A stretch of 63,310 bases of DNA, counting the filler, from Octopus bimaculoides (taxonomy: Eukaryota): the NCBI RefSeq assembly GCF_001194135.2. It is 6 parts of 6 records of this genome, joined end to end, with 100 filler letters (N's around TTAATTAATTAA, not from the genome) between each part and the next. Parts side by side here need not be neighbours in the genome. Positions count along the whole stretch, not along the records: positions 8,993 to 30,283 come from NC_069006.1; 5 more parts are not named here. One strand, written 5' to 3'. This document shows, piece by piece, positions 23,846 to 24,493 of the stretch; the stretch's first letter is position 1, and the number at the start of each line of letters is the position of its first letter. The translations under genes and the position numbers were made by a program. The notes beneath the pieces were generated by a model that did not search any database, had not been told where the DNA came from, and saw only the letters and a list, made by a program, of their open reading frames with translations.

Positions 23846-24493
23846 ATGTTACGAGACAACCAATATTTTATTTTGATATTGTCAAGTTTGACATTAATCG
23901 TCTCCTGTGTCTTGCTGCTACAATCAGGAATCGTAATGTTGACCATGTTTCGAGCCCTCACCGGAATCATTTTACCAATAATAGCCGTGGTCTTGGGAAC
24001 TGGCCAAACTGTGTTCTTTCTGTTTACTTTTACACGGCTCACCCGGTGCGATGTAGAGAAGCCACACCCAAGCCTTTGCTGCAACACATTCCTGCCTTCA
24101 TTATTCTTCTTTTTGCTCATGAGCGGATATTTCGCGTCCTGCATTTGGGCAAATTCAGCGATCAACCATGGACTACAGTTCTCCCTGGAGTTCATACTGG
24201 TCAATGATGTTTATTCCATACAAAAACACTTCAAGTGCTGCGGTGATGTTACCCCATATGTTTGGAAATACCATTTCAGTGACGGAATTATGCCTGATTC
24301 TTGCTGTCAGCAAAACTACCCCGATTGTGGTAAACACGCCCTCACAGAAAATAACCTGCATAAGATAGGATGCAGGAAATTCTTCAAACAACAGACAGAG
24401 TGTCTTATTCTATTAATCCTCATAGCCTCTGCAGTTCTCCTCTTTGAAGCAATTTTTATCATTATTGGTTATTTATACTCAAAGAAAAAATAA
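23846..24493 (+). CDS. Single-exon divergent tetraspanin-family protein (215 aa)
   Basis: Four hydrophobic segments; large extracellular loop with FKCCG, PDSCC, a lone Cys (DCG) and GC before TM4 (6 Cys); A at -3 of ATG and in-frame TAG at 23834 upstream; intact frame. Confidence 0.9.
   Translation: MLRDNQYFILILSSLTLIVSCVLLLQSGIVMLTMFRALTGIILPIIAVVLGTGQTVFFLFTFTRLTRCDVEKPHPSLCCNTFLPSLFFFLLMSGYFASCIWANSAINHGLQFSLEFILVNDVYSIQKHFKCCGDVTPYVWKYHFSDGIMPDSCCQQNYPDCGKHALTENNLHKIGCRKFFKQQTECLILLILIASAVLLFEAIFIIIGYLYSKKK

What the first reader, a model, noticed from the sequence alone, without database searches (positions are those of the whole stretch)
23846..24493. Intronless, atypical tetraspanin as the sole clear gene in 63 kb
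Seen: complete 215-aa single-exon ORF with a 6-Cys EC2 (CCG, PDSCC, C, GC). It has a very short EC1, a long TM2-TM3 loop (TRLTRCDVEKPHPSLCC), a compact pre-CCG region and a minimal C-tail (YSKKK). A (TA)/(TACA) microsatellite ends about 25 bp before the ATG. Known: canonical animal tetraspanins usually have several coding introns and a very short inner loop. Inferred: a retroposed, fast-evolving, lineage-specific tetraspanin, possibly one of an expanded family.
Basis: partly seen in the sequence, partly recalled or inferred. Interest (0 to 1): 0.7.

Follow-up and report, generated by a model that had tools for sequence, protein, structure and literature searches.

The report
Conserved single-exon divergent tetraspanin gene
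The ORF is a real, selectively constrained tetraspanin (four-pass membrane scaffold protein) encoded without introns; it belongs to a small, unnamed, probably cephalopod-restricted family, so it is an old functional gene rather than a recent fast-evolving retrocopy.

Summary
Window 23846-24493 (+) is an intact 215-aa ORF that passes Pfam's tetraspanin threshold (43.1 bits against a cut-off of 32.1). It has the CC-CC-C-C cysteine scaffold of CD63-like tetraspanins. EC1 is shortened, the inner loop is 8-10 residues longer and the pre-CCG region is 13 residues shorter. An (AT)n array ends 23 nt before the ATG.

A 92%-identical orthologue from another sample gives dN/dS 0.16 (p 3e-10). A 45%-identical orthologue family is also one uninterrupted ORF in genomic DNA and shares every odd feature; it gives dN/dS 0.04 between two species. 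Two of its contigs end in apparently non-templated poly(A) after an ATTAAA signal, which suggests it is expressed. So the gene is old and constrained, not a recent or fast-evolving retrocopy.

Searches of 1.8 and 5.8 billion proteins found only these two clusters, both unnamed. No paralogue lies in the 21-kb piece, so there is no sign of an expanded family. Intron-free coding sequences are not unique: an annotated cuttlefish 'CD63' and at least two other tetraspanins are single ORFs, and the literature lists vertebrate TSPAN10 as intronless. Retroposition remains the likeliest origin but left no hallmarks.

Side observation: two distant relatives sit in the gag position of LTR-retroelement-like units.

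The parts
23846..24493 (+). Complete single-exon CDS of a divergent tetraspanin (215 aa plus TAA stop)
   Evidence: ORF. Pfam PF00335 at 43.1 bits, above the gathering score of 32.1. Intact 92% orthologue L001 with dN/dS 0.16. 45% orthologue family.
23867..23935 (+). TM1 (about aa 8-30), with the family-invariant LSSLTL...QSG; preceded by the cytoplasmic MLRDNQY
   Evidence: Hydropathy, AF2 helix 2-39, invariant columns. No non-synonymous change against L001 in aa 1-30.
23936..23968 (+). EC1, reduced to a short, largely hydrophobic turn (about aa 31-41)
   Evidence: 6-residue deletion relative to other tetraspanins. AF2 gives a 2-residue break between helices 2-39 and 42-68.
23969..24034 (+). 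TM2 (about aa 42-63)
   Evidence: Hydropathy; AF2 helix 42-68.
24035..24085 (+). Extended cytoplasmic TM2-TM3 loop (aa 64-80, RLTRCDVEKPHPSLCCN) with membrane-proximal Cys 68, 78 and 79
   Evidence: 8-10-residue insertion relative to other tetraspanins. R64, L65, T66, R67, S76 and C78 are invariant across the 45%-identical orthologues. Palmitoylation of the Cys is inferred, not tested.
24086..24154 (+). TM3 (about aa 81-103)
   Evidence: Hydropathy segment 82-101; AF2 helix 75-112.
24155..24403 (+). EC2 / large extracellular loop (about aa 104-186, 83-84 aa) with CCG, PDSCC, C161 and GC176, plus C186; the constant region is shortened by 13 residues
   Evidence: C131, C132, G133, C153, C154, C161 and C176 are invariant in a 44-sequence alignment. 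PDB sequence hits to the EC2 of TSPAN12 (6e-5) and CD63 (9e-4).
24404..24490 (+). TM4 (about aa 187-210, with E201 aligned to the canonical TM4 Glu) and the 5-residue tail YSKKK
   Evidence: Hydropathy, AF2 helix 177-214, alignment.
23667..23822 (.). (AT)n/(TACA)n microsatellite ending 23 nt upstream of the ATG; present at the same place in the orthologous contig L001
   Evidence: TRF; L001 starts in the same (TA)n array.
24677..24884 (.). (TCTA)n/(TA)n microsatellite starting 184 nt after the stop and running into an assembly gap (24885-25650); with the upstream array it bounds an ~850-bp unique island holding the gene
   Evidence: TRF; N-run list.

Best explanation
This is a functional, single-coding-exon gene for a divergent tetraspanin. 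It represents a small, unnamed orthologous family found so far in two lineages. The lineages are probably octopod and decapodiform cephalopods, but that is inferred.

Shown: the protein has four hydrophobic helices and a large second extracellular loop carrying the CD63-like CC-CC-C-C cysteine scaffold.

Inferred: it works as other tetraspanins do, as a small membrane scaffold. It would bind partner proteins laterally through the variable part of EC2 and the TM bundle and organise them in membrane microdomains.

The family-specific features are conserved across about 55% sequence divergence, so they are likely functional specialisations rather than decay. These features are:
- EC1 reduced to a tight hydrophobic turn.
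- A basic, Cys-bearing inner loop 8-10 residues longer than usual (RLTR...CC), a candidate site for palmitoylation or cytoplasmic docking.
- A shortened EC2 stalk.
- An extra Cys in the motif QQxECLI at the EC2/TM4 boundary.

Origin (inferred): all six ancestral phase-0 introns of CD63-like tetraspanins are missing at once. The most economical explanation is retroposition of a spliced mRNA. An alternative is DNA duplication of an already intron-free gene. Either event happened before the two lineages split. The copy has since been kept by purifying selection.
For: Family membership and structure:
- Pfam Tetraspanin above the gathering score, full-length match.
- PDB sequence hits to the EC2 of TSPAN12 and CD63.
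- AF2 model (pLDDT 74.9) with four long helices. The five best Foldseek matches are all tetraspanins: PRPH2/ROM1, CD81 twice and CD53, probability 0.63-0.99.

Selection:
- Window against L001: dN 0.041, dS 0.261, omega 0.156, Fisher p 3e-10. Differences by codon position are 10/10/31. The CDS has no indels while the 3' flank is about 71% identical with 30 gap columns.
- Second lineage, L002 against L003: omega 0.038, dS 0.73, p 8e-39.

Conserved family features:
- The 45%-identical family shares MLRDN, LSSLTL, RLTR, the loop Cys, CCGD, PDSCC, GCR.FF.QQ.ECLI and the same indels.
- It is one uninterrupted ORF on a 110-kb genomic contig.

Expression of the orthologue:
- Contigs L005 and L008 end in a pure A19 run 73 nt after the stop, where longer contigs read A9-G-A12-CG. 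An ATTAAA signal lies about 15-20 nt upstream.
- These contigs are colinear with genomic L002 for about 1 kb upstream (z 11.8), so there is no splice junction.

Intron expectation:
- CD63-like tetraspanins carry six ancestral introns and the CC-CC-C-C pattern (PMC2650405).
Against: - No expression data exist for the window gene itself. No AATAAA or ATTAAA lies within 200 nt 3' of the stop, and the promoter is unknown.
- The poly(A) evidence comes from the distant orthologue and rests on two short assembled contigs. I could not confirm the library type of those runs.
- Structural similarity is not statistically significant (Foldseek E about 0.1, TM 0.38-0.50).
- The canonical TM1 Asn and the GCxGA end of TM2 are absent.
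- No retroposition hallmarks remain, neither a target-site duplication nor a clear A-tail.
- The taxon is not proven. It is inferred from cuttlefish-annotated relatives and co-occurrence in one assembly.
- Partners, localisation and palmitoylation are untested.
Confidence: 0.8

Rival explanations
1. It is a recent processed pseudogene or neutral retrocopy: an ORF that is intact by chance and has no function.
For: Intron-free CDS embedded between microsatellites in repeat-rich, gene-poor DNA. No recognisable poly(A) signal within 200 nt. Absent from public annotated proteomes.
Against: - omega 0.16 (p 3e-10), with no indel in 648 nt while the flanks accumulate indels.
- An intact 45%-identical orthologue with omega 0.04 in a second lineage.
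- Contigs of the orthologue that look polyadenylated.
- No parental intron-bearing gene with close similarity exists in 1.8 billion representatives; the next hit is E 2e-6.
Confidence: 0.03
2. It is a highly diverged offshoot of an already intron-free, cephalopod-type tetraspanin clade (the cuttlefish 'CD63' type). It would have arisen by ordinary DNA duplication rather than by its own retroposition event.
For: - P0036 (Acanthosepion pharaonis 'CD63'), P0011 and P0020 are uninterrupted ORFs in genomic contigs. With P0009 and P0017 they form a clade with 98.5% bootstrap.
- P0011 and P0020 are in the same assembly as the window gene's orthologue P0030.
- Cysteine spacing in EC2 is identical: 22 residues from CCG to the CC of PDSCC, 7 from CC to C, 15 from C to C (read).
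- hhalign score 122.5, E 1e-18 over EC2 plus TM4.
Against: - The NJ tree does not place the window family inside or next to that clade.
- hhalign scores slightly higher against canonical CD63/CD151-like proteins (131.7).
- The N-terminal half shows no specific similarity.
Confidence: 0.3
3. The family descends from, or donated, a tetraspanin ORF carried by an LTR-retroelement-like unit. Either a mobile-element gene was domesticated by the host, or an element captured the host gene. That would explain the missing introns.
For: - Distant relatives P0005 and P0022 lie 58-250 nt upstream, on the same strand, of 1,512-1,597-aa PR-RT-RNaseH-integrase polyproteins on two independent contigs.
- NJ places them as sister to the window family with 78.5% bootstrap.
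- They share a shortened EC1 and a similar TG..(I/L)P.AAMT.G motif.
Against: - hhalign is weakest against this group: 89.4, compared with 122.5 and 131.7.
- Both groups sit on long branches, so attraction is likely.
- They lack the inner-loop insertion and the EC2 deletion.
- No pol remnant lies near the window gene, L001-L003 or the other single-ORF loci.
- The host of those elements is unknown.
Confidence: 0.07
4. The introns were lost stepwise from an ordinary intron-bearing tetraspanin, through recombination with partial cDNAs or genomic deletion, and not by one retroposition event.
For: No retroposition hallmarks are present. Intron loss is documented in tetraspanin evolution, and TSPAN10 is reported intron-free (PMC2650405).
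Against: All six ancestral positions are missing in both lineages and no intermediate is known. Several other tetraspanins of the cephalopod type are also completely intron-free. Both points fit whole-mRNA copies better.
Confidence: 0.15

Closest known systems
CD63-like (CD63L) tetraspanins as defined by Garcia-Espana et al. 2009 (PMC2650405): CD63, CD151, TSPAN3/6/7/8/9/12 and others
   Same: - Four TM helices, and the six-Cys CC-CC-C-C scaffold with CCG and PDSCC.
- The best profile-profile score is to this type.
- The best solved-structure sequence hits are the EC2 of TSPAN12 and CD63.
- The TM4 Glu is retained.
   Different: - None of the six ancestral introns is present.
- EC1 is below the 13-31 aa range, the inner loop is 8-10 residues longer, and the EC2 constant region is 13 residues shorter.
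- There is no TM1 Asn and no GCxGA motif, no N-glycosylation sequon, and an extra conserved Cys186.
- The Pfam score is only 43 bits.
Single-ORF, cephalopod-type tetraspanins: Acanthosepion pharaonis 'CD63' CAE1293097.1 (P0036) and relatives P0009, P0011, P0017 and P0020
   Same: Intron-free CDS in genomic DNA. Identical Cys spacing in EC2 and a similar CGxxAxxxxNxxxxGC stretch. They co-occur in the same assembly as the window gene's orthologue.
   Different: Only 17-21% identity. They have normal EC1, inner loop and EC2 stalk, and Pfam scores of 95-129 bits against 43. They form a separate clade with 98.5% bootstrap that excludes the window family.
Vertebrate TSPAN10 (oculospanin)
   Same: Reported as a tetraspanin with no introns (PMC2650405), which shows that an intron-free tetraspanin has precedent.
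   Different: There is no evidence of orthology, and it did not appear among the sequence hits. It is a vertebrate lineage, so the intron loss is presumably independent. Not tested directly here.
Functional retrogenes (retroposed copies kept by selection)
   Same: Intron-free copy of a normally intron-rich gene family, kept under purifying selection, with a compact transcription unit.
   Different: No parental gene is identifiable, and there is no poly(A) remnant or target-site duplication. The event, if any, predates a 55% protein divergence.

Membership tests
Tetraspanin (Pfam PF00335) | Profile HMM score above the curated gathering threshold, over the full length | tested here: met
   43.1 bits against 32.1, E 5.2e-11, residues 7-212 on model positions 3-223 of 225. 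Orthologue P0002 scores 42.6 bits.
Tetraspanin (Pfam PF00335) | Four transmembrane helices, with a small EC1 and a large EC2 | tested here: met
   AF2 helices 2-39, 42-68, 75-112 and 177-214 (pLDDT 74.9). Hydropathy segments. EC2 is about 84 aa, within the published 69-132 range. EC1 is below the published 13-31 range. Orientation is inferred from positive charges in the N-terminus, inner loop and tail.
Tetraspanin (Pfam PF00335) | CCG motif plus at least two further conserved Cys (PxxCC, ...C) in EC2 | tested here: met
   C131-C132-G133, P150-D-S-C153-C154, C161 and G175-C176 are invariant across a 44-sequence alignment.
Tetraspanin (Pfam PF00335) | Conserved polar residues inside the TM helices (Asn in TM1, Glu/Gln in TM3 and TM4) | tested here: inconclusive
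   E201 (Q in P0001) aligns with the canonical TM4 Glu. The TM1 Asn is replaced by Ser/Thr (LSSLTL), and no TM3 Glu is seen.
Tetraspanin (Pfam PF00335) | Fold similarity to solved tetraspanin structures | tested here: inconclusive
   The top five Foldseek PDB matches are all tetraspanins (probability 0.63-0.99), but E is 0.1-1.1, TM 0.29-0.50 and rmsd about 9-11 Å.
Tetraspanin (Pfam PF00335) | Palmitoylated membrane-proximal cytoplasmic Cys; lateral association with partner proteins | not testable with these tools
   Candidate Cys 68, 78 and 79 are present, and C78 is invariant. No biochemical data.
CD63-like group (Garcia-Espana 2009) | Six EC2 cysteines in the pattern CC-CC-C-C | tested here: met
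   definition from PMC2650405.
CD63-like group (Garcia-Espana 2009) | Ancestral phase-0 introns 1-6 in the coding sequence | tested here: not met
   The whole Pfam-matching CDS is one uninterrupted ORF in the window, in L001 and in L002.
Processed pseudogene | Neutral evolution (dN/dS near 1) and/or disabling mutations | tested here: not met
   omega 0.156 (p 3e-10) and 0.038 (p 8e-39). No stops or frameshifts in any of five sequences.
Processed pseudogene | Poly(A) tract and target-site duplications flanking the copy | tested here: not met
   Only an A7 run about 115 nt after the stop. The direct repeats found are low-complexity.
Expanded or tandem lineage-specific gene family | Several paralogues, clustered or dispersed, in one genome | tested here: not met
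   No second copy in the 21-kb piece. Only two 90% clusters in 5.8 billion proteins. Only one member of this family found in assembly ERZ21867824. The whole genome of the source species could not be searched.

The most novel reading that the evidence does not exclude
The window family and the tetraspanin ORFs that occupy the gag position of two LTR-retroelement-like units (L013, L014) share a direct common origin. On this reading the host gene is a domesticated mobile-element membrane protein, or the elements captured this host gene and use a tetraspanin in their own cycle. That would link an animal membrane-scaffold family to retroelement biology and explain why the gene has no introns.
Probability: 0.07. 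Interest if true: 0.7.

Novelty: new member of a known kind. Interest (0 to 1): 0.3.

Why it matters
This adds an unnamed, conserved, intron-free tetraspanin subfamily with a remodelled architecture: a near-absent EC1, a long basic Cys-bearing inner loop and a shortened EC2 stalk. No public source in the collections searched gives it a name, so standard intron-aware annotation may have missed it.

It is a modest but clean example of an old intron-free gene copy kept by strong purifying selection. It also offers a natural 'minimal EC1' variant for studying which parts of the tetraspanin fold are dispensable. It does not overturn anything known about tetraspanins.

The retroelement-borne tetraspanins seen in passing may be the more interesting lead.

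Tried and rejected
- Identifying the source organisms failed. Run and assembly accessions, and their prefixes, gave no relevant paper. A homology search with a TE-derived window ORF returned one unnamed protein. The taxon therefore stays inferred.
- A profile search with the family alignment found no further members.
- The first AF2 model (22 sequences) was too weak in EC2 (pLDDT 59.6). I replaced it with a 44-sequence run.
- The NJ sister grouping with the element-borne tetraspanins (78.5%) was not backed by hhalign or by any pol remnant. I treat it as probable long-branch attraction.
- I found no synteny between the window piece and the 20-kb orthologous locus beyond the gene itself and a mariner-like fragment.
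- A search for target-site duplications or an A-tail found only low-complexity matches.
- C-terminal sorting motifs were considered and rejected. SKKK is not a canonical KKXX or KXKXX motif, and the tail is not conserved in the orthologue (YWRGKGIII).
- Rfam, tRNA and Pfam scans of the rest of the piece were empty.

Full report
**Observation.**
Window 23846-24493 (+) is an ATG-to-TAA ORF of 215 codons. An in-frame TAG lies four codons upstream, and there is an A at position -3. The piece is AT-rich (37% GC) and 12% N, and it is full of TA/CA microsatellites.

The product scores 43.1 bits on Pfam PF00335 (gathering score 32.1, E 5e-11), over model positions 3-223 of 225. Against the sequences of solved structures, the only significant hits are the large extracellular loops of TSPAN12 (6e-5) and CD63 (9e-4).

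- CCG at 131-133, PDSCC at 150-154, C161 and GC at 175-176.
- The polar stretch TRLTRCDVEKPHPSLCC between TM2 and TM3.
- The tail YSKKK.
- An (AT)n array at 23667-23822 that ends 23 nt before the ATG.

A second array, (TCTA/TA)n, starts 184 nt after the stop and runs into an assembly gap. The gene therefore sits in a unique island of about 850 bp.

**How atypical it is.**
I aligned the protein with 16 other tetraspanins. Relative to them the family has a 6-residue deletion in EC1, an 8-10-residue insertion in the inner loop and a 13-residue deletion in the constant part of EC2.

Hydropathy is continuous from residue 5 to 63. The better AlphaFold2 model (44-sequence alignment, pLDDT 74.9, pTM 0.65) joins helices 2-39 and 42-68 by a two-residue turn. 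The other helices are 75-112 and 177-214.

The published ranges are 13-31 aa for the small loop and 69-132 aa for the large loop (PMC2650405). EC1 is therefore below range, and EC2 (about 84 aa) is within it.

The cysteine pattern is the CC-CC-C-C of the CD63-like group. That group is otherwise defined by six ancestral phase-0 introns, and none of them is present here.

Foldseek against the PDB ranks tetraspanins in the first five places: PRPH2/ROM1, CD81 twice and CD53, with probability 0.63-0.99. But E is only about 0.1 and TM 0.29-0.50. This is consistent with the fold but is not independent proof.

Other points: there is no N-glycosylation sequon, the canonical TM1 Asn and the GCxGA motif at the end of TM2 are missing, and the TM4 Glu (E201) is retained.

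**Relatives.**
An exhaustive phmmer scan of 1.84 billion representatives found only two proteins below 1e-10:
- P0001: 92% identity, 215 aa.
- P0002: 45% identity, 223 aa.

The next hit is 1.9e-6 and matches EC2 only. Word-indexed searches of 5.8 billion proteins, with the single sequence and with a family profile, found the same two clusters. Neither carries a name, and the window protein itself is not on record.

P0001 lies on a 904-bp contig (L001) that is colinear with the window through both flanks, including the upstream (TA)n array.

The P0002 cluster has four members. One of them, P0030, is a single uninterrupted ORF on a 110-kb genomic contig (L002).

The family alignment shows that the odd features are conserved across the 45% divergence. 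These are MLRDN, LSSLTL, QSG, RLTR, the loop cysteine, CCGD, PDSCC, GCR.FF.QQ.ECLI (including an extra Cys186), and the same indels.

**Selection.**
Nei-Gojobori estimates:

| Pair | dN | dS | omega | Fisher p |
|---|---|---|---|---|
| Window vs L001 | 0.041 | 0.261 | 0.156 | 3e-10 |
| L002 vs L003 (second lineage) | 0.028 | 0.726 | 0.038 | 8e-39 |

For the window pair, the differences by codon position are 10/10/31. The CDS has no indel, while the 3' flank is about 71% identical with 30 gap columns. There is no non-synonymous change in residues 1-41.

The gene is therefore under purifying selection in both lineages. This rules out a neutral retrocopy and contradicts 'fast-evolving' on these timescales. 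The low identity between lineages must reflect great age, an early burst of change, or both.

**Expression (orthologue only).**
P0002 occurs on contigs from six sequencing runs. Two of them (L005, L008) end in a pure A19 run 73 nt after the stop. Longer contigs read A9-G-A12-CG at that point, and an ATTAAA signal lies about 15-20 nt upstream. This is the signature of a non-templated poly(A) tail.

The contigs are identical to each other. They are also colinear with the other species' genomic locus for about 1 kb upstream of the ATG (81% identity over aligned columns, z 11.8 against shuffles). So the transcript appears unspliced.

I could not confirm the library types. The window itself has no AATAAA or ATTAAA within 200 nt of the stop. 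Expression of the window gene is therefore inferred, not shown.

**Is the missing-intron state special?**
- The annotated Acanthosepion pharaonis 'CD63' (P0036) is an uninterrupted 702-nt ORF in its genome.
- P0011 and P0020 are uninterrupted ORFs on 233-kb and 99-kb contigs of the same assembly that holds P0030.
- With P0009 and P0017 these form a clade with 98.5% bootstrap and have ordinary Pfam scores of 95-129 bits.
- The literature reports vertebrate TSPAN10 as intron-free.

The window family is separate from that clade (100% bootstrap for its own monophyly). It has the same cysteine spacing in EC2. Its best profile-profile scores are to canonical CD63/CD151-like proteins (131.7) and to the single-ORF clade (122.5).

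I cannot tell whether the family arose by its own retroposition or by duplication of an already intron-free gene. Either way the event predates the split of the two lineages, and no hallmarks survive.

**Family size and neighbourhood.**
- tBLASTn of the protein against the piece finds no second copy.
- Nine other ORFs have no Pfam hit, and Rfam and tRNA scans are empty.
- Six-frame comparison with L002 finds only the tetraspanin and a mariner-like fragment in common.

There is thus no evidence for an expanded family, although I could not search the whole source genome.

**Taxon.**
The taxon is not proven. The only named relatives are from a cuttlefish, and the orthologue's assembly carries two members of that cuttlefish-type clade. 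From this I infer that the two lineages are coleoid cephalopods, with the window probably from an octopod. That last step rests on my own impression of the repeat landscape and is unverified. The attempt to settle it with a TE ORF failed.

**Mechanism.**
Shown: a four-helix membrane protein with a disulfide-scaffolded EC2 of the CD63 type, conserved under selection.

Inferred from what is established for tetraspanins:
- It acts as a lateral organiser of partner proteins.
- EC2's variable region gives it specificity.
- Cys 68, 78 and 79 next to the membrane on the cytoplasmic side are candidate palmitoylation sites.
- The conserved basic RLTR motif and the extended loop may dock a cytoplasmic partner.

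The near-absent EC1 and shortened EC2 stalk suggest a more compact ectodomain than in CD81 or CD9. The partner and the tissue are unknown.

**Side observation.**
Two distant relatives (P0005, P0022) lie 58-250 nt upstream, on the same strand, of polyproteins of 1,597 and 1,512 aa with RT, RNase H and integrase domains. The two polyproteins are 59% identical to each other.

In one of them a weak protease-like match lies at residues 145-243 and RT starts near residue 570. No Gag domain is recognised, so the tetraspanin ORF occupies the gag position. A literature search found no paper in the library that combines tetraspanin with LTR-retrotransposon terms.

An NJ tree put these next to the window family (78.5%). 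But hhalign is weakest for this pair (89.4), and no pol remnant lies near any of the cephalopod-type genes. I rate a direct link at about 7%. I did not print or assemble the elements.

**Verdict.**
The object is a genuine, conserved, single-exon gene of a divergent and apparently unannotated tetraspanin subfamily. The reading as a 'recent, fast-evolving, expanded retrocopy' is not supported. 'Intron-free, atypical, lineage-restricted' is supported. It is a new member of a known kind and of moderate-to-low interest.

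Noticed in passing
L013:143-775 with L013:833-5626; L014:181-900 with L014:1154-5692: Two independent metagenome contigs carry a tetraspanin ORF (P0005, P0022; Pfam 55-60 bits) directly upstream, on the same strand, of a 1,512-1,597-aa protease-like/RT/RNase H/integrase polyprotein. No recognisable Gag is present, so the tetraspanin sits in the gag position of an LTR-retroelement-like unit. The two polyproteins are 59% identical, so the arrangement is stable in that element lineage. Both contigs break about 150-180 nt upstream of the tetraspanin ORF. 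No such element was found described in the searchable literature.
   Followed up: partly
L009:6001-6702; L011:6001-6705; L012:3001-3693: The annotated cuttlefish 'CD63' (CAE1293097.1) and two further tetraspanins on three different contigs are complete, uninterrupted ORFs in genomic DNA. Together with P0009 and P0017 they form a clade with 98.5% bootstrap. This looks like a clade of intron-free tetraspanins of the cephalopod type, separate from the window family.
   Followed up: partly
L003:136-380 and L002:9079-9323: A GC-rich 245-bp block about 1 kb upstream of the orthologue's ATG is 87% identical between the two species, more conserved than the CDS (84%). It could be a promoter or 5'-UTR start. 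On the opposite strand it could be the first exon of a divergent neighbour: it reads ATGGCAGACGTTCAAGAC... on the minus strand. It is not detectable in the window.
   Followed up: no
window 13690-14163 (-): A mariner-type transposase remnant, interrupted by an assembly gap at 13738-13802. Its motif ...TPSDYHLF...LPDKWKRTVEN is mariner-like by my own recollection. It matches a similar fragment at L002:17215-17541 (29% identity, E 8e-9). There was no Pfam hit at E<0.01.
   Followed up: partly
window 9349-9648 (-): A 99-aa ORF with a Cys/His-rich motif resembling the C-terminal part of a retroelement ORF (my own impression). Its only database relative is one unnamed 130-aa protein (P0050, 48% identity, E 5e-22) on a 1.08-Mb ENA contig. 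No Pfam hit.
   Followed up: partly
window 11489-11902, 16299-16711, 24885-25650, 28969-29775 and flanks: The larger assembly gaps are flanked on one or both sides by (TA)n/(CA)n microsatellites. The gaps are therefore probably unresolved microsatellite arrays. The tetraspanin's 3' region beyond 24884 is unknown for this reason.
   Followed up: no
window 16711-16806, 18615-18869, 26200-26541 (and 18777-19058 on the opposite strand): A dispersed repeat gives similar pseudo-ORFs (…GFFQF.STKST.KA…) at three or more places in the piece, in both orientations. It is probably a SINE-like element and was not characterised.
   Followed up: no
window 28386-28475 (+) and L002:12074-12205 (-): A short 31-aa translated match (52% identity, E 9e-5) between the window piece and the orthologous locus. 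Its orientation relative to the tetraspanin gene is opposite in the two loci. It is probably a repeat fragment rather than a syntenic exon.
   Followed up: no
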